A stretch of DNA of 50,533 nucleotides, filler included, from Bipalium vagum (lineage: Eukaryota), in NCBI GenBank assembly GCA_037834085.1. It is 3 parts of 3 records of this genome, joined end to end, with 100 filler letters (N's around TTAATTAATTAA, not from the genome) between each part and the next. Parts side by side here need not be neighbours in the genome. Positions count along the whole stretch, not along the records: positions 18,051 to 34,438 come from JBBMKC010113757.1; 2 more parts are not named here. One strand, given 5' to 3'. The notes under the pieces are model-generated. The model searched no databases, was not told where the DNA came from, and worked only from the letters and a program-made list of their open reading frames with translations. Made by a program: the position numbers and the translations under genes. Positions 18,051 to 43,810 of this stretch are shown one piece after another (position 1 is the first letter of the stretch; the number at the start of each line of letters is the position of its first letter).

Positions 18051-18972
18051 GTTGGATGCTTAATCGTTGGTGAAATGCACTTTGGTGAAAACTCTTCATT
18101 CGGAAAACGACGAACGAAAGAATTACCACTATGATTGTCGATGGTAAATGTGGATTCGTCAATAAACAAAACATTATTCCACTCTTCTGAAGTCCAATGA
18201 AGGTGTTATTTAGACCATCTTAAACGATGCAGTCGTTGCTTTTCCGTTAATAACGGTTTTTTTCTAAGACGACAGCCACGAAGACCAAAACTTTGAAGCC
18301 TTTTCCTCACGGTTGAAGTGCACACTGCCACACACGTTGATTCGGACCATATTTTTGTTAATTCTGCTGAATTCAGATTTCAATCTGCAAGGCTAAACCT
18401 TCTTAACATTGTGTCGTCCCTTGCGGAAGTTTTTTTCGGACGCCCGGTTCGCTGTTTGTCGTCTATTTTCTCCGTATCCTTGTATTTTTTTAATAGTTCT
18501 GATGACTGATGACTGATTAAATTTCACGATTTCTGCAATTTCACGATTAGATTTTCCTTCTTTATGGTAAAAAACAATGAAATAACGTTGTTCATCACAT
18601 AATTTCATTGACATTTTAATTACTAAAAAAAGTTATAAAAAACTCAGAGATTTACAAAATATGCACGATTTATACTTACAAGTCTTCTATAACTTTCTAC
18701 GAGCAAATAGTTTTCAATAACAAATAATTTTACAGTTATTGTAATATTAAAATGGATGAAAACTATAATTTTAAATTAGTTAAGTTTATATCAGAAATAT
18801 TTTTACACCGTAAAAAAAATAATCCCTTGTAAATATATTATATTACGTATACTATATTATTATCATCTCAATACATTTCATAAAATTAAAATATAAAATA
18901 ATCTTGATATCGGCATTAAATGTTTAAAAAATCAAGATTTTTAGGGTGATGCAAGACATTTTACCATCACTG
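18051..18972 (-). mobile_element. Tc1-like transposon, 5' half with left TIR, truncated by gap
   Basis: TA|CAGTGATGGTAAAATGTC terminus at 18972. ATG at 18614, HTH SNREIAEIVKFNQSSV, then after one frameshift RTGRPKKTS, KKPLLT and NVLFIDESTF; one premature stop. Confidence 0.92.
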
Positions 18973-19478
18973 TAAATTATCTTTTAGGTCTTTTTAAAAC
19001 TTAACAGCGTATTTAATATTGTATTTTTGAGGTTAATATTTTTATTAACCAACTTTCCAAAACTTCCCCAAGTTCACATGAATCATTCATTATTTTATTA
19101 ATATTTTTTATATATTTTTTATTCTTTTAATCAATGAATTATTAAACAAAAAGAAGAAAAAAGGAAAATATTAATTCTTTTATTATAATATTAATTATTT
19201 TTTTAATATTATTAAAATCATTTCCTTAATTTTACAGTTATATTCCAAATAAAATTTCAATTATTTTGAAATTTTTTTACCATTATTACTTTTAAAATCA
19301 TGACTATTACTGGCATCATGATTCACATTTCATTACTATTTTTACATTTTCTAATTTTTATTTAAGAAATATTTAACCTTTAAACAAAAAGAGGAAAAAC
19401 AAAGGAAAAAAAATTTTTTTTTCTTATAAAATTAATTATATTTATAAGACACCTTGAAACCAACTACCAATAAAGAAT

Positions 19479-20238
19479 TGTGAGTGGAGGAAGATTGCCT
19501 GAATTAAATAAGATCGTTTATTGTTTTTGGATGTAGAAAGGAGGGTCAACTATCTGTTTACTTTTTGAAATTATGATAATCCCTTTGACAAATCACATAA
19601 TGCAGACAATTATTTATTAGATTAAAACCAAGATATCACAAAAACGTCGATACTAGTCACACAATATCTCACGATCAGTTAATAATTAATCAACACCTCT
19701 TCGAGTAGTATCAGCAAGGTATCGAAATGGAAAGATCTCCAAGCTTGGAAGGTTAGCAATGAGTCACATAGCTGGTAGCTGACCGTGCTCAAAGTAACCC
19801 GGACACAGCATCGAATGCTTCGTTAATCGTATCTTTCAAAATCGTCAAATAATTTTCAGTAATAAAGTTTTTAATACATCAACAGTTATATCGCTCTTTC
19901 CCAGCTCTGTGAGGTCTTTTTATAGTCCCCAACAACCAATCAGAGCTCCCAGATCTGGAAGCTCGTCTAATTCGTCTCTCTTATTATATTTTCGGGTTGC
20001 GACAGCAGCTGATGCTGCAGAAAGAAAACACAACATAAAATAGTAATTGAAGTATAATAATCTATCTACCTTTCAAAAACTCTCTAATTCGGCTTTTATT
20101 CTCATTAGCCTATTCGGAAATAAAAATAAGCATTGAATCCCTTGTAGAACGTAAATTGATTAATTCATATCTGCCTCTTTAGTTAGAAAAATAATATATT
20201 ATTATTTTTTGTTGTTATTATATGTGAAAAACCTAACA
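19479..20238 (-). mobile_element. Candidate solo LTR
   Basis: TG...CA ends with short imperfect inverted termini (TGTGAG / CTAACA). On minus: CCAAT box (19936-19940), TATAAAAA (19924-19917) and AATAAA (19522-19517) in LTR order. No TSD seen. Confidence 0.5.
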
Positions 20239-20653
20239 CGTTTATTTTTTAATTTATTTTTATTAAAATGAAAAAGAAACATGTTTAAAACATTTTTAAA
20301 AAAAGAGATGTGAAAGATTCGAAGTCCAGAAAAGAAATTTTAATTAATTTTTCCGTGGAAAATTTTCAAAATTACAATTTAGGTTTCAAAGATTTTCTTA
20401 ATACATATTCAACTCTATTTTTAATGTTTTGTTCTTTTCTATTTATTTTCTAGGTACAGATAAAAACTGGTAAAAATATTAGTATACACGATTGAATAAA
20501 ACATAAATTGAAGTATAAATTGAAAAAATCTTTTTATTTAATTTAATATATAAAATTTTTAGAAGAATATAAAATTTGTGATAACCTTAAGATTTTATTT
20601 TTTTAATTTACCGAAACCATTGAAAAGTACATGCAGAAAAATTGTTTTTTAAT

Positions 20654-21151
20654 CTAAATAGATGTGGTTGACTCTAATTTAATATAATTTTCTGGGTTGT
20701 TTATTGGTATTGGTACTCGCGTTAATTGAGTAGGAAATTGGGGAAGATGAATAGAGTCTCCACCATTAATATATTCGTATGATATAGGTGATTTCATAGA
20801 TTGATTGGTGTAAGGAGATGGAATGTGTTCGTGCGGAGAGTAGCAAAGGTATTGAGAAACTTGATCATGCAGAGTATTTGATTGATAATCGTTCGTGTTC
20901 TGAATTGGGTATGAGATTGTGTAATTTATCATATCTGGATGTATAAGATTCATAGAAAGATTCATTCCATTGATATTTGATGGTCCTACCAAAATATTAT
21001 CGGGAAGACAATTATCAGTGAATTTGTAAACGTATCTTTCTCCAGGCACCTTTTGCATGATGTTCTTGTCGTAATAATAACGAAGAGATCGACTTAATTT
21101 GTCGTAGTTCATAGCAGGACGATTTTTCTGAGCTCCCCACAAACGAGCAAC
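20654..21151 (-). CDS. ETS gene coding exon 4 (recognition helix, wing and C-terminal tail)
   Basis: CTAAC branch-like motif plus ttgttcag acceptor at 21152; [27 protein letters not shown]; TAG stop at 20656-20654. Confidence 0.95.
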
Positions 21152-23567
21152 CTGAACAAATCGTTAGTTTAGTTTGTTATTCCGGTTCGTATTGTTTTCC
21201 AAAAGTAGACATGAGATTGAAAAAGAATGAAAATAAATAAATAATAAAAAAATTTAAAAATATTAATATTTTATTCAACTTCAAAAATTCAAATTTTGGT
21301 AATTCACCGAAACTTTACAAGTTTAATTTGATGCTGGTATATTCCTTAGACCGCGCGATCCTTGTAAACATGTATCTTGTCTTACTGGAATATCCTGATG
21401 GCATCCTTGCATAAAACAACATCAGCGATCTTGGAAATCGGTTAAGAATAGATTCATGATGTGATTATTTCTACGGTATCGCACACTACTTTCTTTGTCT
21501 CTTACCAATGCCGATAATTTTTAAACAATCATAATTAAAATAATCACAAATTCATGAATAAAAAGCGAAATTGTAATGTGGAATGCTGGTAAATTTTCTG
21601 TGAATTAAAACACAAGTATCTTAATTTTCAGTTAATCAAAGCTCCACAGTATAATGTTCATAACATAATAATATTACTAAAATAATTATTATTATTATGC
21701 TTTTTATTACAGAAGATATAAAATAATATTTATATCTCAAAATATTAAATATGAATAATATAAATACTAACAAACAGAATTTCAATTCAAAATACAGTTA
21801 TAAAAGAACCTTTTTCTGTTTCAATTATTAATAATTCCTATAATGTTAAGATAATAATAATATTAATAATAATACTAAAATTAAAATAATCATTGTAATA
21901 TTAAAATAATTATTATTAACCAATTATAATTGGTTAAAATCAAAATTATATTAAAATTTATAATTAATTTTTTAATGCATAAAATCATTTTGAGAAAAAA
22001 AATTGTTATAACAAAATGAATATCTGCAATCAAAAATTTAAGGAAATTAGATTGAAAAAATTTGTAATAAAAGTAAAGCTTGGAGCGATGTTAATTTGAA
22101 GTTTCGCTTGAGATTCAGTTCTTAATCCATCTGATACTTTAGACTAGAACATTACTTAAATCATTATATAAAGAGATAGAGCGAGTTCATGTGTAGAGAA
22201 ACAAAGATATTATGAAACCAATTTAAGATAATAATAACATATCGGAATGTATAAGACTATCAGAAAGATTAAATTCCCTGATACTTGACGTTCAACAGAG
22301 ATATCGTCAAATGATAGTGATGAGAAAATTTTTAATTTTGTCCATGATCCTCATTATTGTCAAAGTTTAAATTAATATTTTTCGTAACGGATTTTTTTAA
22401 AGGAATAATTTTGATATTTTCTCCCAAGGTTTTAAGGAATTATCAAAGGATGATGAAGAAATTAAAATACATGCTACAAAATTCATAACTTATTCTCGAA
22501 TTCAAATTTTCAAAAATGTGCCAGCAATCAAAGGAATGCCTAAGATGTGTGATGGAATATTTTAATATCTTTTCCTTGAGATTTATGTGTAAAAAAATAA
22601 TTAAATTTACTTCTTCCGGTTCAATCAATTTAAATTCCTTATTTCTTCCAGTCCAACAAATAACTCGCGAATGTCTACTGTCATGCAATAGAGATAGTAA
22701 AAACTGCCAGAGCTGAGGATTTCCTCTTTCAGCTATGCCTTTGGAATTGTTGGTACACGATCGGGAATTGTTATTGGAAATGTTAGAACGAGAATTAGAA
22801 TTGAAGTTCGATTCCGACAAAAATGAAGGAGATGATTCCTCACATGAAAACTGAATAGTACTATTGGAACTGTTTATTAATCCCGAGTATTCTAAAATTA
22901 AATAGTTGAATGAAAAAGTCTTTTCACTTTATGGTTTTTTCACTTTATCTTTGAGGAAAATTTAGAAAAAGTATTCTTCTAATTTTTAAAGCTTACCTAT
23001 ATTATTAGCCAAAAATGCTACATCTCCGTTTCCAGAATTTTCTGATGTTATATAGGAAATGTTGTTACTGTTCACCATTGATACACTTGGTTGAGAAATA
23101 CTGAAAGATATATGTATCAATTTCATCTGCATTTTACTTTTGACAAAAATGTAGAGTCCTTCTTACAAAATAATCGCATTTTATTATGATTATTAAATTA
23201 TTAATTTTGTTCGCAATACAATAAAAATTGAAAATCAATTTTAATAAAATCTATAACTCGAAATCAATATTTAATTATCAAATCAAACTCACCTGGTCAT
23301 TAATCCATTATTATTGTCAAAAGTTCCTGGAAATATCTCACTTGCTAATTCGCATTCGCCATAGTTGAATCTTGAATCTAATCGTATCAGAGATTCCGGT
23401 CTGTCGGAAATGTGACCGTGAAAATCTGCACCTCCAATTCCACATAAATTGATGCTTGATTGACAAAAACCCTCTACGTCACCCGAGTATGGTAATGATT
23501 GGCGTAAATACAGATCCGGCACGCCAGGAAGTTGAGAGTCGAGGTTACCTCCGGTATTGAGATTCAT
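20654..23567 (-). CDS. PEA3/ETV4-like: PEA3-subfamily (ETV1/ETV4/ETV5, Ets96B-like) ETS transcription factor; 4 coding exons, 385 aa
   Basis: Exons (minus): 23567-23293, 23100-22997, 22891-22611, 21151-20654. All introns are GT-AG (192, 105, 1459 nt) with compatible phases; CDS totals 1158 nt. Spliced ETS domain [39 protein letters not shown]|[44 protein letters not shown] closely matches the PEA3-group consensus. An in-frame TGA lies 3 codons upstream of the ATG. Confidence 0.93.
21353..21515 (-). mobile_element. Merlin (IS1595/ISXO2-like) transposase N-terminal remnant in ETS intron 3
   Basis: [39 protein letters not shown] resembles the Zn-ribbon region (H.M.L...DRWRC...C...I..R..TW..GS) of eukaryotic ISXO2-like transposases. 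Confidence 0.55.
22611..22891 (-). CDS. ETS gene coding exon 3 (Ser/Asn-rich linker plus N-terminal half of ETS domain)
   Basis: Acceptor ttttag at 22892; ends ...EFKLIEPEE|GTAAAT; contains LWQFLL and WTG motifs. Confidence 0.92.
22997..23100 (-). CDS. ETS gene coding exon 2 ([35 protein letters not shown]); absent from the ORF track
   Basis: Acceptor tctttcag at 23101; donor G|GTAAGC at 22996; 104 nt, open and in frame with both neighbouring exons. Confidence 0.82.
23293..23567 (-). CDS. ETS gene coding exon 1 ([12 protein letters not shown]...GLMT)
   Basis: ATG at 23567; donor AG|GTGAG at 23292; 275 nt, phase 2. Confidence 0.8.
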
Positions 23568-26500
23568 TGGAATTCAATTTGTATATTTGTATGAGGATAA
23601 TAAATCAATTGTGAACCCGATCCTGTCTTCATTTGATGCACATGTATTTCAGATATAAAATTGCTTCAATGCCATTGGTCAGAAAAGCGGCTAATATGAC
23701 ATGTACGACATACACACCAATACACATTATTCTTTATTTACTCAATTAAATTCTGAAATTCACTTTCTGTCAGATATAAAGTGACAGATAAAAAATCGCT
23801 GTCAAAGTTACATGAAAAACATAAAATTTTATGTAATAATTAAATTAAAATTAAATCCAGGAAAAGATCACGAAAATTTAATAATATTATTTCTAATTTA
23901 TTAAAAGAAAATTACCGAAGAAAAAAGATCAGGTGGATGGACTTTTCTGATTATATGTTACCAGGAATTCCAGTGGTCAATGTGGTAGTTGCGGACAATA
24001 GTATCAGGTTGCCTGACCCGCATTTATAATCGAATTACATAGCTTCTCACTATTATTAAAGAAATTAATTGTTTTCTAGCTGAAATATTGCCTATTTACC
24101 ATTTTTATGTATGTAAGGAAACATTTCTGATAATTTTTTGATATTCTGATTTCGATTTCCTTGCTCATTTGATAAAAAATGATCAATAAACAAAAATTTC
24201 CCCATTAAAAATTTTTTTGAACAAATGTTTTTTTATTATTATTTTTATAAAAATATACACATATATATTCTTTTGATTTTCAGGAAATATTTCCTAGTGA
24301 TACCAATAGAAAATTGGTATTCAATTTAAGACAAAGATTTTCATTCCCAAATAACAATGAACAATATAGAATTGGAAAATAGTTAAAGGAAATGAAGAGA
24401 TGTGCTACATTCATATATAGAAAAATTATGTCATACACATTTATGAACACTCATTAAAGTCCATTCTCTTCAGACTTTACCAAATGTTAATCAAAACATA
24501 TATATCGATCCTTTTCACTTCAGAAATATTAATTAAAATTTATTTGATAATTTGCAGAAATATTTTAATGACATTTCCCAATCTATAAATTCAACCAAAT
24601 CAAGAGAGTTGAATAATTAAATCGTCAAAGGGAAATTTTACGTTACTTCCGTCTTTGGAATTGATAAATAAACAATTATTATTCCACTAGTCCTCTATAA
24701 CCATCCTCCAATAATTGATACCGGTTACATCACCATAGAAAACCAATTATGGAAAGTTAGTTAATAAATGACTGACTTAGTTGTAAGGATAATTGCCTCA
24801 GTTATCATGCATAATTGTTCTAATTGTCGTACTATTATTATTAACATGCACAAAAATAAGGATATTTGTCAAACGAGTCTGCATTGTGTGTATGTACACT
24901 GCTTAACCGATCCAATGGCTCAGCACATGTTTACACACACAACTGTTCAGTGTTAGTGTTTGTAAGTGTGTATTGTATACGACAGTAATTATATTGGTAT
25001 TATTTCATTGGTTTTCAATCTGACATAAGATAGGGTTTTTTGTTCATTATTTTGTCTGCGGTCTATTTTCTGTTTCAGAATTTAGCACAACTCTACGAAA
25101 AATTTGCAGACAAACTTTTGGAAAATATCTTTTGGTTTCATTTTCTAAAACTTAAATCTTGGATTTAGTTCACAACATTTTCCCTGAATAATGAGTCTTC
25201 TTTACAAATTGTATAGTATAATGAAATTATTATTTCTGGTAATAAAGTTGAATGCGATTTAATTTTCTTTACCAAATTTTTTGAAAATAAGTACCATAAT
25301 TTATTTTATGTATTAGAAGAAACTGTCATGGAATTATTCATAATTTTATAGACTGAATCTTTGCTAAAACAAAATAATATTGCAAGTTATTATAACGTAA
25401 AAAAAAGTCTTAATTAATCAAATATAGATTACTTCAAAATTTTTAAATCTTAAGACCAGAACTAAATATTTACTAAAATATTTTACTCTTCAGTTCCGTT
25501 AAAACTGATTTGATTTTGCTTTCTTCATTTCTCATCGGAGCCAGTCGGTGTAAGGTAATATTATCTTTATATTTTACTTTTCAACCTTTACAATGTTCTT
25601 TACTTTGGATGTTTATGAAGTCTAGGTTTATAAATAACTCATAGAAAGAACCTATACAATTTATGGCCATTTCTAATTGAAATTTACACTTAATTAAGAA
25701 TCTCAACTATTTAATCCAATATTTAGCTTACTAGAATATTATTTTTGCCAATAATAAATGATCTTTGAAAATATTTTTTTGAGAACCCCTCTATGTGACT
25801 TTGATGAATTATTAAAAAGCATAAATTAGTTAAAAGGTATAAGACATGACAACATTAAGTTCCGAGAATGATATGGTCACAATTATTATTTATTGCCGTT
25901 ATTATCTTATCAAATATGAATACTTTTAAGGTTGCAGGAAATTGATACACCCTAATAAAAGATATATCTATTCCTAAAATATCATTATGATAACCAGATA
26001 CAGAAGAATCTAGAGAAAATGGAGGATATTTAATTATAAAATAGTCACAGTTATTCCATAGGTTGATGATTAAAGAATTTTTTTAAAAAAATTTGATTTT
26101 ATTGTTTACTTTTAACAAAAGACATTGTCCACACTTAAAATGACTAAAAACCGTAGAAGATATAGAGTATTTTTAATTAATAGAATAGGGAAATGAATAA
26201 GGTATTTGACCAAGGAACAGTTAATGATCATGTGTTACAACTATGATATAAATGTTTTCACTGGGAAAATGAAATTCTTGAATGTCATGAAGATCGCATC
26301 CAAAATTGACAAGGAACAGCTAAAAAAGGTAACCGAAGAAGATTCATACAAAACCATCATAGAAACTCAATGTCAACAATGCAACTATACTCCTTCATTT
26401 AAATCAAATTAAGAGGGTAAAAACATTGAATAAATATGAAAAATAGAAATAAACAATATTAATTGAGTGAATATGAATTATTAATAAACGACACTACTGT

Positions 26501-29500
26501 TATGTCGACCTGACATAATTTAAATTTACACATTGTAAATTATATGTGAATAATAATCGCATGAATAATTTGTATGTGATAATAAATATCATACATATAA
26601 GTTTCAAGTTCGTAGTAGAAATAAAAATGGGTTTTTAATTTGATTTTTTCAAAAGATGAATTTTAAAGTATAAAGTGGATTTTAAAATCTAATATCAATA
26701 TTTCCTATAGAACCATAAGAAACACGAATGGTTTAGAATATAATGTATTTAAGCAAGAAATTTGGAAGATCTTATCTAAAGATGGGAACGGAAATAACAC
26801 AAATACATAGAAAATTTTTAATTTCTACAAAAGCCTTCGTTAAAAGATTAAAAATAAATAAATCCTGTTTTATATAAGTCCTAGCATATCATTGGGCATA
26901 TTATTTGCAATGGAACCGATCCTGTTTGTCCCATAAATATAATTTTTCAAATGTTTTTTTAATCCAGAGTTTCTATCTGAATGATTAAAGTGCTTACTCT
27001 GTAATTATGCTGTAGAGGCTTTTTGAAGAGCTGCTGTTCTCGAAACATTATCCTTCTATTTAATTTGCTATCCATTGATCTTGGTAACAGAGGTTACCTC
27101 GATTTGCTGTTCATATTAAATCTCATAATCAGTGATACTTATTATTATGTCCGTATTTAATCTTTAATACCCTTTGAATGATTTTAACTCAAATTTTTCT
27201 GTGGAGCTGACCAACATCAGAATCCAGTTATTATTATTTGGAAATTTCAATTTATGTTAATGGGTTCATCTCTTTTATATGGTTGGCAGTTTATAATAAA
27301 TTTCTACTATGATACAATAAATCAACGTTTTAATACTTTTACTTTTCTAATAAACATCTGGGATAACTTTTAATATTATATACAAAATGTAAAGTAAAAA
27401 TTAAACATTATAGAAATTGAGTATTAATAATATCGATAATAGGGTAAAATTATAATCTAGTACTGGACGATGTTTTCATTTTCATTTAGAGATTAACTGA
27501 TTTTTGTCAAATGTGTGCTTAAAGATTAACATCAAATAAAATAAGTTCGTTAAAACTGTGAATGTTTCAAGGACGTTGGAGTAGTTACTTTTAAAAATTG
27601 TTCTAAATTTCAAAAAATATGTTTCGCCTTATATTACTATAAAACTATTCGTAACAAGTAGCACGTAAATTTACTGAATTTGTCACTTCTGTCAATAACA
27701 TGTTTGCAAATAATTGAATCAAAAAATACAATAAAGCTTTACTCTTCTAACATAAATACAAAAAAATAATCACACAATATACAACTTTAAATGTCTAAAA
27801 TAGTCAGAATTAATAATACTGAAATCAAATCAATCAAATCAAATAATTAATAATATTCGAATAAGTATGTAATATAAGAGCATACATTGAAAAGCGCTTA
27901 TCAAACAACGATCTTAGTGCAATTATCAACAGCAATATAAAGGACGTACCACCAAGTTAAACCAGAAAATTCAACAAAATAATTAATAGAATTAATCTTA
28001 ATTTTAAGAAAATAACAAAAAGAAATATAGATATGACCATTTAAGTAGACGATGGATCCAAAGGTCGTTTGATGAGCCCGATCCGGTAAGCTTATAAAGA
28101 ATGGGTGCCATAGAAAAATTATTTGTCTATTATCGGTTTTTCTTCCTTTAAACTTGTTAGGATTTGTTTCTGTCTCTGTATACCATCTTATGACTCCTTT
28201 AATTTGTCTGAACCAAACTTTAATAACCTCTATTTCTTTTAGGTTAACCAGGGAACTTTTCTTGGGTAATACCAGGAGTTAATTCATATCTCTATTATTG
28301 ACTAAAAATTAATTTTTTTTCTTCGTGGGAAATGAAGGAAAAGTACTGAATTCCGGCGGGCTTCAATTCAGATTTGTGGCATTCCATCGTTGATTTGTTC
28401 AACTGAAACATAAAAACATTAAAATTACAATTAATAAATAAAATTTTTTTATCTTTTTTCATATTTTACTCATGGTTGCCTATAATAATAATAATAAAAT
28501 TATAAAAATGTAATAATAATAAAATATAACTTTATTATTAAATAATTTGTTAAAGTGTATGTAAATCAAATAAGTATAATAGTTAATAGTTGTACTTATA
28601 ATAGTTCATTTAATAATTTTAATTTATTTTATTTTAAAGTATTATTTATTATAACTAGGGCAAGTAAAAGTTAATAAAGTTAAAATGTGTCCTATAGGTT
28701 CTCTTGACCTACAAAGCACATGTATACCATTTTCGGTCCCTCTATCGTGATTTATAAGATTAAAACACGGGTAAAATTTATGGTTGTTAAAAATAAAATT
28801 TTTAGGCTAAAATTAAATTAATAATAATTAATTAAATAAATAATAATTAATTAAATAAAACGAATAATTAATTAAACTAAATTAATATGAGAAATAGGCA
28901 TTTTTAACATAATATTAATATACTTAGATGTGTCTGAAATGATAAAATAAAAAATAGTGCATAAGTTTAAATGCAACATATTCAATTTTAAAATAGGAGT
29001 GAGAAACACTAAAAAACAGAGGGAGACCTTGGTTCATTGTCTACCTAATATATTTAATTCCAAAATTTAATGACTGCGAGGAAAGTTAATTCAGTTGAGT
29101 AAAATTCAGAAAATTATGGCTGGTTTTGTGATAAAGAATTTTACTAAGTTAATTAGTTTTCCAGTAATTCGCTTAGTTTAGAAAATTTCAAAAATGTGCA
29201 AAAGATGGTCGATAAGGCGTTATTATGTGAAATTAGAAAAGAAAAAATCTTGAGACAAGGTTTGATTAAATGTATAGAGTAAGTGAAAATGGAAATTAAA
29301 TTGAGAAAATTTCAAAACGGACAATAATTAAAAGACATAATTAAATTAATCGATGAGATTGTAAAAAAATGTTACTTTTCAGGTAATTCATATTATGAGC
29401 TATCTTGAGATACAAAAATCCCTGATTAATGCGAATTATATTATTAGTGTCTTATATTTTTGTGCTTGAATTTCGATTGTCGCACTTCAAAGTCAATTAC

Positions 29501-30929
29501 CGACCACTAACAAAAAGTAAAAATTTAGAATGCAAATTGACAGTGCTGTTAGTAAAATTACATTTGCAAAAAAGACCTTGTTTATGAAGATTTTGATACA
29601 GGAAGTGACAATCGGTCAGTGAGTTCTCATTTAGAAAAACTTTGTGAAAATGACCTCAAAATTGATACTTAGAGAGTTTATGAAGAGTCGGATAAAGAAT
29701 GCCATACTGAAGCTTTCAAAAAGGAAATTACTTTATAATTTAACACAATATTTCAATTTTTAGACCCTTTAAAGCAATGCATTGACACAGACTTAGATTC
29801 AGATCGTAGTGCGCAAGTTTGCAGAATCTTAAATTCAGATTTATTACCAATTTACAAAATTATCGCAAATGGCGAAAGGAAAACAAAAAAAATTGATAAC
29901 TAAATGTTGAGACGCAACTGATGAACAACGGAAAATCCCTTCATTAGCCAGTACCAAATTTTCTTATAAAAACTATTTAAGGTGAAAGAAAAAATACTTA
30001 AATACTGAAAGAGACATTTATACAAATGATTTCATAGAAAAAATTTACATATATTATTAGTATTGACAACTCCAGGCTAAGTTTTCACGTTGTTATTATT
30101 TGCAGATCAATAAAGGGTGTTCGGTATCACGAATAAACCTCCTTATCGCATGTATTTCGTGTTTGCTGGACTGAAGATGGAAACCACATTATTCAGTAAT
30201 AGGATGAAAATTGCAGAAAAATTAGCGTCCTCGTCATACAGCAAGGAATGATTTTTCCTGAAATAAAAACAAGAGATCAAGAAATACATACAACAAAAAT
30301 GGTACAATTTTCTTTTAATTATAGAATTATAATAGCTCAAGGAAGAGGTATATCATCTTTAAGCGCACTAGGAATTTTTTCCATAAAATTTTGGAGTTGA
30401 CTATATTAACATCAGATTTTAAAAATATCTCAGTTACTCATTTTAAATAAACAAAAGTTGCTTACAAAATGTAGATTAATGATAAAGCAAATGTTAAAAG
30501 GAGAATTTTTATGCTTTTTAGCTAAAAAATTATTAAATTGAATTCAGCTGAAATCTAATTTTTATTGATAGTTACAAATGATTTTACAAGACTTTAATTA
30601 GACATTGTATTATATAATGATTAGTTACTTGTACAGTATTAGTTATATAATATTGTGTAGATATTAATTAGTTATATATATATATTAATTAGTATTTAAG
30701 AACATAATGATAAAGGATAGTAGGTCTAATGAGACCTTTTCATGCAAATGATATATACAAAGTTAAAGCATACATGTTTTTAATTGTCAATTATAGTTGA
30801 ATTTGGGAAAGCTGTTTTCATTCATCATCGGGCCTAGACACTCCGCTGTTCCAATTGGTTCATGTTTGGATTTTGTTGTGATTCTTTTTGAATTGTCAGC
30901 AGGCTTTGGATTGTTTTCATTGTTAGTTT

Positions 30930-31430
30930 AGCAAGAGTTTGATGATGTTCATCACTGATTTAACTGTGGATCCCAATACAAACAGATGATAATAATTAAA
31001 ATGTTCCTTCATATGCTTCTTCAGGTGGTTGAACAACCAGAAATCACTTGGTGCGAAATCTGGACTGTAAGGTGGGTGGTCCAGCTGCACAAATCCATCT
31101 TTTGCAAATGCTTCTTGGGATTTCTTTGATGTGTCATGAAGGAAGAAAGATTTTGGTTCCGAGGCTTGCGTTGGATAATTCGGGTTTCAAGTTAGAGATT
31201 AAGTACTAATCGGAATCTATGATTTCTTTGGTAAAATCTAGCTATAAGATGCCTTTTCTATCCCGAAAGACGGTGACCATTGCACATTTACGATTCGAAA
31301 TTCCCAGATGCAAAATTTTAAAGGCTTCTCATTTAGGAAAACCCATTTCTTTGACTCTCTGTTAGAGTAAGGAATGCAGAGACGTCTACATCTGGTCTGT
31401 AGTTATGATATACCATAAAATGGTCAAACA
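30930..31430 (-). mobile_element. Mariner remnant
   Basis: AMVTVFRDRKGIL*LDF and LDHPPYSPDFAPSDFWLF on the minus strand. Confidence 0.85.
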
Positions 31431-31697
31431 ACATCAAATAGAACTAGAAATAGTAAAATTTTACTGGTAAAATTGTAAATGAAACACCTAAGATATTTGA
31501 TATAAGGAAATAAAATTATTAAAAATTAAAAATAAACTAAGGAAAAATTAAAATAATATTTATATATAGATAAAATAGAGTAAATAACATAAAAGTGGTA
31601 AAAACAATAACTATTTTAAGAAAAGGTATAATAAAAATATCTAAATTAAGGAAAAAAACAAAAGAAACGCAGAACATATTTTTATACTTTTAAAAAT

Positions 31698-32428
31698 TGT
31701 ATAAGCCTCAAGAAAACAAGTCAAAAGTTTTAACAACTGGGCTCACCAACTCCCTCGAACAAAGTGTAAATAGAAAACTCACGAATAAACAAAGCGATTA
31801 ACAAAATAAGGTATATTTGTTATCACAAATGCGAGGTTAGAAATCTATTCAATCAATCAAACAATATTCAAAATTACAAATGATTATTTAATTAATAAAA
31901 TATCTTCTTGACTTTACGATAGTCGAAGAAGTCCTGATAAGAAAAATGAGTATTCTGTTGCCTTGATCGAAGCAGAATCGAATTAGCGAGAGAATAATAA
32001 AAAAGAATAAAGAAAATATTAAAAAGTTAGTGATGAGAAGAATTTCCTTCTATCACTAAATAAACTTTAATTAATTAATTCTTTAAGTTTAACTCGATCG
32101 GTTAAACACTTTTGGAATTGATACAAATTCCTACTTATAATTATTACCAGTGTCTTAAAAGTATCTTTAATTTGAATAGCTGTAAGCGTATTCTAAGATT
32201 TATTAAGGGCGTTTTGAATGTGAAAACCAGGAGTTTATAAACTCCGGTTTTCCACATTCTAGAACTTCTCATTGGCTCTATTTTAACTTACTAAATATAA
32301 ATTTATGTGTGGGCGGTTTCTATTTAAGTAAGTTTTTCTTAATAATAATAAAATTTGCGTATGTGGTTACTATTTTAAGTAAATTATTATACTAAAGAAC
32401 TTACTATATTTAGTAACCCTACTTCCAC
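31698..32428. mobile_element. Possible solo LTR
   Basis: TGTATAAG...CTTCCACA termini; palindromic TATA (ggagtttataaactcc, 32230-32245) with a nearby CCAAT; no TSD. Confidence 0.3.
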
Positions 32429-32659
32429 AACATTTATTTACAGTACTTTATTTTATTTCCATAATAATAATAATGCTTAATAAAGTGGGTTAATATTTTA
32501 ATTAATAACTAACTCCACGTTTTACATATTTAATTTAACTTTTATTTTATTTTAAAATGATTATTATTTATAACTTTATTAATTATTTAAATATTATTTT
32601 TTACAACATTAAATATAAATCACATTCCTTTATTCAAAAATATAAAAATAAAGATAGTA

Positions 32660-33440
32660 GGCCTTACGAAGCCTTTTCAAGCACATTAAAATCAATTCAA
32701 ATATAAAATGTAAATTCAAATTCAAAGGTAAAATCAAAATTTTCCAATATCAAATGTTTCTAATATCGATTACTAATTTCGGGAGCTGTCATCACTCTCC
32801 ATCGGCTATTGAGATTCGTCTGCGATCTCTGGAATCTTTTTCTTTTGATTTTGTGTTGGATCTGTCTGGTTTTTACCAGTTTTACTGTGGATCCAGACAG
32901 ATGGAAACAAGTGGAAGTCATATGGCACTGTCTAATGAGTACGCGGGTAAGGTAGAACCTCAAAGCCAGGTTTTTAAAAATTTTCTTTAACTGGTTTTGC
33001 AAGATGTGGTCTTGCATTATAGTGTTGTAAAACGATCTGATCATGTCTTAGGTCAAATTGTACTTCTCTGGTTGTCCTGAAAGTTCTTTGTCTTCAACGA
33101 TAAAGTCACTTGCGTTAAGTAGTCTATATCATTCTTGAAATGTTGGTTCGGACAGAGCATATTCACCTTAAGCTATTAATCTATGGACATCGACTGCTGA
33201 TTTCTTTAAATTGTAGCACAATAATAATAATTCTACCAATTCTGTTTTCCTGTTCCATTATTTTGCATTTTTGCTAAAATACATAGGCTATTTAATCATT
33301 TAAAACAAAAACTAACTATTGATATCCAATAGATATATTCCACATATTTTATAGAATATTAACAGATACAATAAACAAGGAGAATATGAGTGACTAATTT
33401 TTATGAAATCCAATTGAGGAAAAAGGCTAAGGTAGGCTCG
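32660..33440 (-). mobile_element. Internally deleted mariner
   Basis: Minus strand N-terminal DFIVEDKELSGQP joined almost directly to IVLQHYNARPHLAKP and ...FHLFPS; weak terminal inverted similarity (agccttttc / aaaaggct). Confidence 0.75.
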
Positions 33441-33799
33441 CTTAAGTGATAATTAGTTTTCATACTCACCAAGACCCAGGCGGCTCTCAAAACCTACTTT
33501 CTGAGGATAAAACAATGATGGAAATACACAATTACCAGCGATACATCACCCAACGCTTTGTGTAATAAAGGAAGTCATAAATCAACGATTACCTGACTTG
33601 TATATTAAGTTAAGGCTTTGATTTAATCAAAAAATTGAAAAAGTTGTCTAATTTATTAAGCAAATTTAAAACGTTAAAAGTCATTAAACTCCTATAAAGA
33701 TTGTAATTATTTGTATCACATGAACTTTATTTGAGTTAAAATTTTAAAAACAGAGATTCTAATCCGAGTACATTTTATCGTAAATCTTAAAATCATCAA

Positions 33800-33863
33800 T
33801 AAAGTAAGATGAAAATGTGTTTTAGTGTTAGTGAAAATTAATCGGAGATACCGGGATTCGAAC
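33800..33863 (-). repeat. 3' half of tRNA-Ala-like repeat/SINE (T-arm, acceptor 3' strand and shared tail)
   Basis: Minus: GTTCGAATCCCGGTATCTCCG ATTAATTTTCACTAACAC...ATCTTACT, homologous to 43751-43808. Confidence 0.72.
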
Positions 33864-34438
33864 GAACAAAATTGTATTTTCACAACAAATCTTTACAAAT
33901 AATTGAAAATAAATCAATTGCACATTTCTTTGAGCCTAGTATGGCATTTTTACAAAAGAAAATAAAAGAAAGAAAGTTTATCACATAATTCAGGTTTGTT
34001 AACATTAGATTAGTTCTTCGTCACAATCAGTCAGATTTTGTCCGTCATTATTGTCGTCTGTCTGAATTTGTGGTTCATCATTGGCAATATCGTCAAATTC
34101 AGTTTGCGTCATCTTCAGCTTTCCGACATTCCGATAAAAATTCCATTGCGTTGCGCTCCACTTAATATTCGAAGATACGCAGAATTTTCCGATCTCTGTT
34201 GATTTGCGTTTTGAGAACTGCAGATTTTTGAGAATTTCGTCGTTTCCCATGATCCGAGGCTATAACGGCAAATGTATCCAGCATGATTGTCTATTGCGGC
34301 AAAGCTTCTTTAGTTTTGTTGAGCAGATCTTCATAATGCCTGAGATTTTTCTCATGATTCAAAAACATGTTGTTTTCGGTGTCATAAGGGCATTTGACGT
34401 CTATGAGAAGAAGACGTTTTTGATTTGTGAATTCGATT
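33864..34438 (-). mobile_element. 3' end of an REL-endonuclease non-LTR retrotransposon (NeSL/R5/Utopia-like), truncated by gap
   Basis: Minus: RLLLIDVKCPYDTENNMFLNHEKNLRHYEDLL...TFAV / SLGSW / NDEILKNLQFS...FCVSSNIKWSATQW matches the post-PD restriction-enzyme-like domain (IIDV.CP.E...K..KY...GSLGSW...N). One stop, two frameshifts; ORF ends at 34005; about 140-nt 3' UTR. Confidence 0.8.
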
Positions 34439-34538
34439 NNNNNNNNNNNNNNNNNNNNNNNNNNNNNNNNNNNNNNNNNNNNTTAATTAATTAANNNNNN
34501 NNNNNNNNNNNNNNNNNNNNNNNNNNNNNNNNNNNNNN
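34439..34538. other. Scaffold gap: 44 N + TTAATTAATTAA + 44 N
   Basis: Same artificial linker as at 17951-18050. Confidence 0.97.
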
Positions 34539-43701: not shown

Positions 43702-43810
43702 GCCGGAATTTCAGCGGTTAGAGAGGTCCCTGCGCATGTGAAGGTCCTGGGTTCTAATCCCGGTATCTTAGAATAATTTTCAACTAACACAAATCAATGA
43801 TCTTACTCTA
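43702..43810 (+). repeat. tRNA-Ala-like pseudogene/SINE head with tail shared with 33800-33863
   Basis: A-box-like TCAGCGGTTAGAG; GCATGTGAAGGTCCTGGGTTCTAATCCCGGTATCT resembles the eukaryotic tRNA-Ala 3' half (..GCATG...AGGTCCCGGGTTCGATCCCCGGCATCTCC). Acceptor stem does not pair, so it is not a functional tRNA. Confidence 0.7.

What the first reader, a model, noticed from the sequence alone, without database searches (positions are those of the whole stretch)
33800..34438. REL-endonuclease retrotransposon whose 3' end joins the T-arm of a tRNA-Ala-like repeat: candidate new site-specific element/target pair
Seen: on the minus strand an REL-type domain (IDVKCPYD...HYEDL...SLGSW...N) ends at 34005. 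About 140 nt of 3' UTR follows, then ...ttttGTTC|GTTCGAATCCCGGTATCTCCG, i.e. the 3' half of a tRNA-like sequence starting at the B-box, in the same orientation, with GTTC duplicated at the junction. An uninterrupted homologue with its 5' half sits at 43702-43810. Known: REL-encoding non-LTR clades (R2, R4, NeSL/R5/Utopia) are typically sequence-specific for multicopy RNA genes or repeats. Inference: this family may cleave the conserved T-loop of tRNA-Ala or a tRNA-Ala-derived SINE, using it as a safe harbour. Only one junction is visible, and the 5' junction is lost in the gap.
Basis: partly seen in the sequence, partly recalled or inferred. Interest (0 to 1): 0.78.

Follow-up and report, generated by a model that had tools for sequence, protein, structure and literature searches.

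The report
Retrotransposon end joined to tRNA-like repeat
A decayed tail of a jumping gene of the R2/NeSL kind sits directly against the back half of a very abundant tRNA-like repeat, which fits a known habit of such elements in flatworms of inserting into tRNA-type sequences.

Summary
On the minus strand, 34437-34005 is the C-terminal restriction-like endonuclease (REL) part of a non-LTR retrotransposon ORF. It matches RT-bearing, R2-like proteins. It is broken by one stop and two frameshifts. A 141-nt UTR follows, then GTTC|GTTCGAATCCCGGTATCTCCG, then a TTTT trailer.

Contigs of one public run show that both parts are repeated. The tRNA-like piece has about six times the summed depth of the UTR. 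93 contigs leave our locus exactly at 33863 and run into the rest of a tRNA-like sequence, so uninterrupted copies exist.

Indirect signs suggest that other element copies share this junction.

Best reading (about 0.55): target-specific insertion into the T-arm of a tRNA-derived repeat. The main rival (about 0.25) is that the element carries the tRNA half as its own 3' end.

NeSL-clade LIN families that target tRNA-Arg and tRNA-Glu genes in planaria are already published (PMC4640811). So this is at most a new member of a known kind.

The parts
34005..34437 (-). C-terminal restriction-like (PD..D/ExK) endonuclease part of a non-LTR retrotransposon ORF. It is cut by the N gap at 34439. It is broken by an in-frame stop (34293-34291), a frameshift near 34258-34270 and a 7-base deletion at 34240/34241. 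The stop codon is at 34007-34005.
   Evidence: Translations. phmmer hits P0001-P0003. Two-frame tblastn match, E 3e-19. RVT_1 and zf-RVT in P0001 and P0002. P0002 is closest to solved R2 proteins, E 6e-52. The 7-base difference comes, table 4.
33864..34004 (-). 3' UTR of the element, 141 nt, AT-rich, ending in ...TTTTGTTC.
   Evidence: Repeated: summed word depth 16135 in 33896-33963 against 27 in the single-copy flank. No unusual fold: z = 0.13.
33860..33867 (-). Junction GTTC|GTTC. The last four letters of the element (33867-33864) repeat the first four letters of the tRNA-like part (33863-33860).
   Evidence: The divergence point of 93 contigs lies exactly at 33863 (table 7).
33843..33863 (-). 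3' part of a tRNA-like sequence: last T-stem base, T-loop (TTCGAAT), 3' strand of the T-stem (CCCGG), 3' strand of the acceptor stem (TATCTCC) and one more base. The standard-numbering assignment (from base 53 on) is my inference.
   Evidence: B-box-like 10 of 11 (the motif is recalled). Bin 33828-33895 has summed depth 100581. The loose-end consensus at 33863 completes the T-stem.
33827..33842 (-). Trailer ATTAATTTTCACTAAC, which many copies of the tRNA-like repeat share. It holds a TTTT run, the form of an RNA polymerase III terminator. The repeat ends in two classes of boundary, at about 33832 and 33826.
   Evidence: table 7: loose ends 'before' 33832 (77 contigs) and 33826 (52 contigs), with low agreement (0.53, 0.45). 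The single-copy contig (record 3, 0 differences, depth 27.1) runs from 32983 and stops at 33851.
33352..33826 (.). Single-copy flank downstream of the tRNA-like repeat.
   Evidence: table 2: depth 27.1-37.6 in 33352-33759. Record 3 in table 8.

Best explanation
The stretch is the 3' end of a dead copy of a multi-copy non-LTR retrotransposon with a restriction-like endonuclease. It belongs to the R2 group and is most like NeSL/R5/LIN-type elements. The copy is broken in three places and its 5' part is lost in the assembly gap.

The copy lies inside a member of a very abundant tRNA-derived repeat: a tRNA-like body plus an 11-17 nt trailer with a TTTT run. It is inserted in the same orientation, in the 5' strand of the T-stem just upstream of the T-loop, between bases 52 and 53 in standard tRNA numbering.

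Proposed mechanism (inferred from what is established for R2, not shown here): the element's protein recognises the tRNA-like DNA, its endonuclease nicks the bottom strand at this point, and the freed 3' end primes reverse transcription of the element RNA (target-primed reverse transcription). This gives a precise 3' junction in all copies. The thousands of tRNA-like copies serve as a harmless landing site.

Shown: the REL homology, the broken state, the repeated nature of both partners, and the existence of uninterrupted tRNA-like copies that diverge from our locus exactly at the junction.

Inferred: that other element copies share the junction, the cleavage site, and the specificity.
For: - REL homology to RT-bearing proteins. 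The relatives are R2-like by PDB search, E 6e-52. One has a weak Ulp1-protease hit, as NeSL-type elements do (E 0.02, below the cut-off).
- the flank is single copy (depth 27). The UTR bin sums to 16135, the ORF bins to 1988-12048, and the bin with the tRNA-like piece to 100581.
- 93 contigs leave the locus at exactly 33863 and run into sequence that completes a tRNA T-stem. So the tRNA-like unit exists without the element.
-, table 7: no loose-end cluster 'before' 33864 appears among the six listed (the smallest listed has 23 contigs), although 27 contigs carry the non-reference letter at 33881.
-, table 3: from_end values of 51, 58 and 42 at 33881, 33889 and 33930 fit a non-reference contig that crosses the junction as far as about 33830.
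- Literature: RLE elements are mostly target-specific. Planarian LIN families of the NeSL clade target tRNA-Arg and tRNA-Glu genes (PMC4640811, section 10). Precise 3' and variable or missing 5' target flanks are the rule in Utopia and R2 (PMC4640811, section 6).
- Non-LTR elements that target other transposons are known: Tx1 in Tx1D, and Tx1-Mar in Mariner-N4_AMi (PMC4494074, passages).
Against: - No second copy of the junction was seen letter by letter. The evidence for recurrence is indirect, from one call on short Logan contigs of a single run, which may be the very sample the window was assembled from.
- The tool warns that summed depth is not a copy number.
- from_end may count unaligned letters, and 462 loose-end rows were not shown.
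- The 5' junction is lost in the gap.
- ARAGORN and Rfam do not call the half-tRNA.
- The adjacent GTTC GTTC doubling is not what simple microhomology priming predicts; that would leave one copy.
- A non-specific R2 family exists in a planarian (R2NS-1_SMed; PMC5035012, passage). So carrying a REL domain does not guarantee specificity.
Confidence: 0.55

Rival explanations
1. The tRNA 3' half and its trailer are carried by the element as its own 3' terminus. It would have been picked up once from a tRNA-like repeat, by read-through or 3' transduction, and copied with the element ever since. In the stronger form of this idea, the element and the tRNA-like retroposon share this tail because the element's reverse transcriptase recognises it, making them a LINE-SINE partnership. 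The junction would then recur without any target specificity.
For: - The shared part (33863 down to about 33832/33826, 32-38 nt) is 3'-terminal in both the element and the tRNA-like repeat (table 7). That is the geometry of LINE-SINE pairs with common tails (described in PMC4494074, introduction passage).
- Both partners are very abundant.
- Target-derived sequence inside the 3' UTR is known for one vertebrate R2 lineage (PMC5035012, section 17 passage).
- The GTTC GTTC doubling looks like an arbitrary joint.
Against: - The shared part is of tRNA origin, not LINE origin. It supplies the 3' strands of the T-stem and acceptor stem, whose partners lie only in the uninterrupted repeat (consensus, hand reading).
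- The R2 families that carry target sequence in their UTR are still target-specific.
- The UTR plus the half-tRNA forms no special structure (z = 0.13).
Confidence: 0.25
2. Chance adjacency. Either a non-specific element happened to land in one of thousands of tRNA-like repeats, or a 5'-truncated tRNA-like retroposon landed next to the element's end. The junction would then be unique to this locus.
For: - Only one junction was read directly.
- The genome is full of both repeats, and nested insertions are common.
- Non-specific REL elements exist (R2NS-1_SMed; PMC5035012, passage).
Against: - By the rough depth ratio, the tRNA-like units would make up well under 1% of the DNA (my arithmetic, and not a true copy number). 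A random hit in the same orientation is therefore a priori rare.
- No large loose-end cluster appears at 33864.
- High-depth non-reference contigs appear to run across the junction (tables 3 and 7).
Confidence: 0.1
3. The plus-strand complement of the tRNA end is a primer-binding site of an LTR retrotransposon, unrelated to the REL element.
For: The plus strand at 33843-33863 is complementary to a tRNA 3' end, as primer-binding sites are (established knowledge, recalled).
Against: - The preceding plus-strand letters are TTAAT, not the TGG that pairs with CCA.
- In 93 contigs the similarity runs on for 30 or more letters into the T-stem, variable and anticodon regions, far beyond an 18-nt primer-binding site.
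Confidence: 0.02

Closest known systems
LIN15_SM and LIN25_SM (planarian NeSL-clade, R5/LIN lineage), specific for tRNA-Arg and tRNA-Glu genes; NeSL-1_TV for tRNA-Pro (Kojima and Jurka 2015, PMC4640811, section 10)
   Same: A non-LTR retrotransposon encoding a restriction-like endonuclease, with its 3' end joined to the 3' part of a tRNA-type sequence, in an AT-rich animal genome. The relatives found here have an RT, a zinc-binding motif and a REL domain, plus a weak Ulp1-protease signal.
   Different: It looks like a high-copy tRNA-derived repeat with a shared trailer, not a set of ordinary tRNA genes.
R2 (28S rDNA-specific; solved structures 9nl2, 9dou, 8gh6)
   Same: A C-terminal PD..D/ExK endonuclease after the RT and a zinc motif, with a precise 3' junction made by target-primed reverse transcription. 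The relative P0002 matches R2 proteins at E 6e-52.
   Different: The 48-aa window piece itself finds no PDB chain. The target is not rDNA. The copy number appears much higher than is usual for rDNA-bound elements (depth only).
Utopia (U2 snRNA gene-specific, NeSL clade; PMC4640811, sections 6 and 8)
   Same: The 3' flank is the downstream part of a small RNA gene, starting at a fixed base. 5' target fragments are often missing. Specificity ranges from strict to weak.
   Different: The target is a tRNA-like sequence, not U2.
Tx1 in Tx1D, and Tx1-Mar in Mariner-N4_AMi: LINEs that target another transposon (PMC4494074, passages)
   Same: A repeated mobile element serves as the landing site of a LINE.
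   Different: Those LINEs carry an AP-type endonuclease and the targets are DNA transposons. Here the endonuclease is REL-type and the target is a tRNA-derived repeat.
Dada DNA transposons (Dada-tA in tRNA-Ala genes; PMC3706591 and PMC8869645, passages) and Dewa (spacer of tRNA-Leu; PMC3706591, passage)
   Same: tRNA genes or their arrays are used as a safe harbour, with insertion at a fixed site.
   Different: Dada uses a DDE transposase and makes 6-7 bp target-site duplications; by those passages its tRNA-Ala site contains CATGCTAAG, a sequence that does not occur in the T-arm stretch joined here. Dewa is listed in that passage among zebrafish target-specific elements; that it is a Tx1-clade element with an AP-type endonuclease is recalled, not read.

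Membership tests
Non-LTR retrotransposon with restriction-like endonuclease (R2 group: R2, R4, NeSL, HERO, CRE) | C-terminal PD..D/ExK-type endonuclease domain homologous to that of RT-bearing elements | tested here: met
   Three phmmer hits at E about 4e-4 to 5.5e-4. tblastn two-frame match, E 3e-19. Columns D967, K969 and others are invariant in the 6-protein alignment A1, and the window has ...IDVKCPYD....
Non-LTR retrotransposon with restriction-like endonuclease (R2 group) | Reverse transcriptase upstream in the same ORF | not testable with these tools
   The window ends in N at 34439, before any RT. Relatives P0001, P0002, P0004 and P0007 have RVT_1.
NeSL clade (NeSL-1, R5, LIN, Utopia) | Position in an RT phylogeny with Repbase reference families | not tested
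   No RT in the window and no Repbase sequences on hand. The only pointers are that relatives are R2-like and one has a sub-threshold Peptidase_C48 hit (E 0.02, 15.2 bits against a cut-off of 20.7).
Target-sequence-specific non-LTR retrotransposon | The same precise 3' junction in independent copies | tested here: inconclusive
   Indirect only: tables 3 and 7 (see the report). No other copy could be fetched: searches were closed, and searches were blank.
Target-sequence-specific non-LTR retrotransposon | Uninterrupted copies of the target exist | tested here: met
   93 contigs diverge at 33863 into the remaining tRNA-like sequence. The bin depth is 100581 against 16135 for the UTR.
Target-sequence-specific non-LTR retrotransposon | The 5' flank is the upstream part of the same target (allowing deletions) | not testable with these tools
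   The 5' part of this copy lies in the N gap, which may not be filled.
tRNA gene (as target) | A cloverleaf recognised by a tRNA finder, and copies that share nothing beyond the mature 3' end | tested here: not met
   ARAGORN found 0 tRNAs and Rfam gave no tRNA match, as expected for a 21-nt half. Copies share 11-17 nt of trailer beyond the acceptor end (table 7). That points to a tRNA-derived repeat rather than independent genes.
LINE-SINE pair with a common 3' tail | The SINE's 3' tail derives from the LINE's 3' end | tested here: inconclusive
   A common 3'-terminal 32-38 nt is seen. However, it is of tRNA origin, because it pairs with the 5' parts of the uninterrupted repeat (hand reading). 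So the direction of borrowing would be the reverse of the classical case.

The most novel reading that the evidence does not exclude
The element and the tRNA-like repeat are partners, not parasite and landing site. In this reading, a REL-type LINE ends in the T-arm and acceptor half of a tRNA plus a polymerase III-type trailer, and its reverse transcriptase recognises that tRNA-like 3' end. It would thereby also mobilise bare tRNA-like polymerase III transcripts to thousands of copies. That would be a LINE-SINE pair whose common tail is a piece of tRNA.
Probability: 0.1. Interest if true: 0.7.

Novelty: new member of a known kind. Interest (0 to 1): 0.35.

Why it matters
If the junction is confirmed in many copies, this adds one more target to the known spread of target specificities in flatworm-type NeSL/R5/LIN elements. 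The target would be a tRNA-derived high-copy repeat cut at the start of the T-loop. It would also add a case where a REL-type LINE uses a dispersed repeat, rather than a gene array, as its safe harbour. That could explain how such an element reaches hundreds of copies.

Site-specific REL elements are of practical interest as templates for targeted DNA insertion (PMC13586686 and PMC13580325, seen only in the search listing). The kind itself is already in print, so the gain is incremental.

Tried and rejected
- Same-family protein fragments: the search for homologous proteins with the 81-aa tail piece found nothing in its length range of 45-142 aa. With P0001's REL region it found only P0001 itself and P0007.
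- The search for related loci with alignment A1 matched 75 pattern stretches in metagenome contigs and 64 in viral contigs, but none was confirmed.
- Exact DNA patterns from the tRNA-like part found 0 in metagenome contigs and 0 in viral contigs. They found 3 bacterial MAG contigs in genome contigs, none of which is a tRNA at the match (ARAGORN). So nothing was learnt about the isotype.
- PDB search with the 48-aa piece found 0.
- Pfam on the two window pieces gave no REL family, only a chance IL23 hit at E 0.01.
- Rfam on the whole piece and on 33800-33864 gave only weak chance matches and no tRNA.
- Folding the UTR plus the half-tRNA gave z = 0.13.
- There is no other copy of the element or of the tRNA-like piece inside 18051-34438.
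- A full-text search for a 19-letter stretch found 0 papers.
- The Atlas look-up of a neighbouring ORF only said Ets domain, Eukaryota. It fits the roughly 27% G+C but is not shown.
- The primer-binding-site idea was rejected (see rivals).
- Supplements are closed. S6 Fig of PMC4640811, which shows the junctions of the LIN families, may bear on whether this target is already drawn there.

Full report
**What is there**

Read on the minus strand, the last 433 bases before the N gap (34437-34005) encode the C-terminal part of a restriction-like endonuclease (REL) domain.
- One frame gives IEFTNQKRLLLIDVKCPYDTENNMFLNHEKNLRHYEDLLNKTKEALPQ, followed by a stop.
- A second frame gives ...SLGSWETT.
- A third gives GNDEILKNLQFSKRKSTEIGKFCVSSNIKWSATQWNFYRN..., followed by an acidic tail and the stop at 34007-34005.

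This copy is dead. It has an in-frame TAG at 34293-34291 and a frameshift near 34258-34270. At 34240/34241 it lacks a 7-base stretch that most of the depth in other copies carries (table 4: 1912 of 2293). I built no repaired reading.

**Is it a REL domain of a retrotransposon?**

Pfam has no model that hits the pieces, and the 48-aa piece finds no PDB chain. However, phmmer of that piece against 1.84 billion representative proteins returned three proteins (E 4.0e-4, 4.1e-4 and 5.5e-4; 45-50% identity).
- Two of the three (P0001, P0002) carry RVT_1 and zf-RVT upstream of the matched part. The third is a 325-aa fragment without a Pfam hit.
- tblastn of P0001 on 33700-34438 gives two collinear matches in two frames (27/58 and 17/39 identities, combined E 3e-19). 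P0002 (combined E 6e-17) and P0003 (separate E 4e-13 and 3e-06) behave alike.
- P0002's best solved relatives are R2 proteins (9nl2, E 6e-52), ahead of LINE-1 ORF2 (E about 1e-19).
- Its cluster mate P0004 has a weak, sub-threshold Ulp1-protease hit at the N-terminus (E 0.02). That domain is mentioned for NeSL/Utopia-type elements in PMC4640811 (section 10).

The element is therefore an R2-group, probably NeSL-like, non-LTR retrotransposon. The clade was not tested by phylogeny, because the window holds no RT.

**The junction**

After the stop come 141 nt of AT-rich UTR (34004-33864), ending in ...TTTTGTTC. Then comes GTTCGAATCCCGGTATCTCCG (33863-33843), and then ATTAATTTTCACTAAC. The 21-mer is unique in the window; none of 100 shuffles had a match at up to 3 mismatches.

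Taken alone, it is not provably tRNA:
- ARAGORN calls nothing in the piece.
- Rfam gives no tRNA match, even when the stretch is cut at the junction.
- The recalled B-box motif at one mismatch turns up by chance in 23 of 100 shuffles.

**What the reads add**

One public run holds the stretch (X1, Logan contigs, 0.68 of the sampled words). It may be the sample the window was assembled from. Laying its contigs on 32400-34438 at 80% likeness gave the following.
- The flank 33352-33759 has a summed word depth of 27-38. A 869-letter contig with no differences covers 32983-33851, so that flank is single copy.
- The ORF bins sum to 1988-12048, the UTR bin 33896-33963 to 16135, and the bin 33828-33895, which holds the tRNA-like piece, to 100581. 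The tool warns that these sums are not copy numbers. As orders of magnitude, they say hundreds for the element and thousands for the tRNA-like piece.
- 93 contigs fit the tRNA-like piece and then leave our locus exactly at 33863. They run into CCGGGACCTTCACATGCCCAATGAACTCTC (plus strand, agreement 0.55, median loose length 42).
- Read by hand on the minus strand, this supplies CCGGG in front of the T-loop. That gives a perfect 5-bp T-stem with the window's CCCGG. Further up it supplies a 5-bp stem with a 7-nt loop of anticodon-arm form. The loop letters are compatible with an Ala-type anticodon but have an unusual base at position 33. This is my inference and was not checked by a tool.
- 77 and 52 contigs leave the locus 'before' 33832 and 33826, with low agreement. 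So the repeat ends 11-17 nt after the acceptor end, just past a TTTT run.

The partner is thus an independent, very abundant, tRNA-derived unit with a polymerase III-type trailer. It is not ordinary tRNA genes, and it is not merely a piece of the element's UTR.

**Is the junction shared by other element copies?**

This is the crux, and I could only approach it indirectly.
- Twenty-seven contigs carry a non-reference letter at 33881, holding 12314 of 14710 of the depth there (table 3).
- If these copies ended in unrelated flanks, a loose-end cluster 'before' 33864 should rank among the best supported. The six rows shown go down to 23 contigs and none is at that place. However, 462 rows were not shown.
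- The from_end values of the non-reference letters at 33881, 33889 and 33930 are 51, 58 and 42. That fits one non-reference contig spanning about 33830-33972, which crosses the junction and stops where the tRNA-like repeat ends. This fails if from_end counts unaligned letters.
- I rate recurrence as likely, about three in four, but not shown.

Protein and DNA scans of the metagenome, viral and prokaryote collections gave nothing usable. There is no second copy inside the piece.

**How it most likely works**

For REL-bearing elements, the established mechanism is target-primed reverse transcription at a sequence-specific nick. It gives a precise 3' junction, and a variable 5' junction that often carries a deletion (PMC4640811, section 6, for Utopia and R2; PMC10499050 seen as abstract only).

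Applied here: the protein would recognise the tRNA-like DNA, nick the bottom strand at the border between T-stem and T-loop, and copy the element RNA from there. The thousands of tRNA-like units would be a harmless landing site, large enough to hold hundreds of copies.

I give this reading about 0.55.
- The main rival (about 0.25) is that the tRNA half was captured once and now travels as the element's own 3' end. This may even be as a tail shared with the tRNA-like retroposon, in the manner of LINE-SINE pairs. Target-derived sequence inside a 3' UTR is known in one R2 lineage (PMC5035012, passage). The adjacent GTTC GTTC doubling fits an arbitrary joint at least as well as it fits priming.
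- Chance nesting gets about 0.1.
- The UTR with the half-tRNA has no unusual fold (z = 0.13). That gives no support to a structured tRNA-mimic tail.

**Comparison with what is known**

[quoted passage not shown] They also state that NeSL-1_TV is tRNA-Pro specific, and that target specificity has diversified in the R5/LIN lineage of platyhelminths.
- PMC5035012 (passages) repeats this and describes a non-specific planarian R2 family.
- Dewa (tRNA-Leu spacer) and the Dada DNA transposons (tRNA-Ala and others) show tRNA-type safe harbours in other element classes (PMC3706591 and PMC8869645, passages).
- LINEs that target other transposons are also known (PMC4494074, passages).
- For Schmidtea mediterranea, tRNAscan-SE calls 4115 loci, of which a stringent set of 457 tRNA genes occupies 1372 loci (PMC7962491, section 5, part 1). 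A planarian genome does hold thousands of tRNA-like loci. That the window comes from a planarian is not shown; I can only say it is an AT-rich animal genome.

In the two searches made for it, I found no print record of a REL element joined to this particular tRNA-like sequence. One search used NeSL, tRNA, planaria, target specificity and LIN15_SM. One search used a 19-letter stretch. Repbase and the closed supplement S6 Fig could not be consulted.

**Verdict**

The kind is known, so at best this is a new member: a new target, possibly a tRNA-derived repeat rather than a gene. Interest 0.35.

Noticed in passing
window 20654-21142 (-) and 22443-22820 (-): Two exons of an ETS-family transcription factor gene. 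The upstream exon holds Ets-domain positions 1-38 and the downstream exon positions 40-80, with about 1.3 kb of intron between them (Pfam E 3.5e-10 and 2.6e-17; Atlas first hit is an Ets cluster). A host gene about 11 kb from the element.
   Followed up: partly
window 18393-18614 (-): A 73-aa ORF with a weak helix-turn-helix match of the Sleeping Beauty/Tc1 transposase type (HTH_SB, E 1.2e-4, below the cut-off). Probably a remnant of a DNA transposon.
   Followed up: partly
window 30923-31090 (-): A 55-aa ORF...QLDHPPYSPDFAPSDFWLFNHLKKHMKE.... From memory it looks like the C-terminal part of a mariner-type transposase. Pfam gave no hit.
   Followed up: partly
window 32400-33351: Another repeated stretch next to the single-copy flank. 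Summed word depth is 280-5450, with many variant contigs, internal skips, and loose-end clusters at 33175 and 33233. It is an unidentified interspersed repeat; Pfam found nothing in its 94-aa ORF.
   Followed up: no
window 33864-34438, other copies in run X1: Many contigs of the element show internal skips of 48-449 bases between the UTR and the ORF (table 5). The family seems to include internally deleted copies.
   Followed up: no
proteins P0001-P0007 (ENA and JGI metagenome records): The only relatives of this REL domain among 1.84 billion representatives are a handful of unnamed metagenome proteins with RT plus REL. P0004 also has a weak Ulp1-protease signal. This element lineage is almost absent from the protein collections.
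   Followed up: partly
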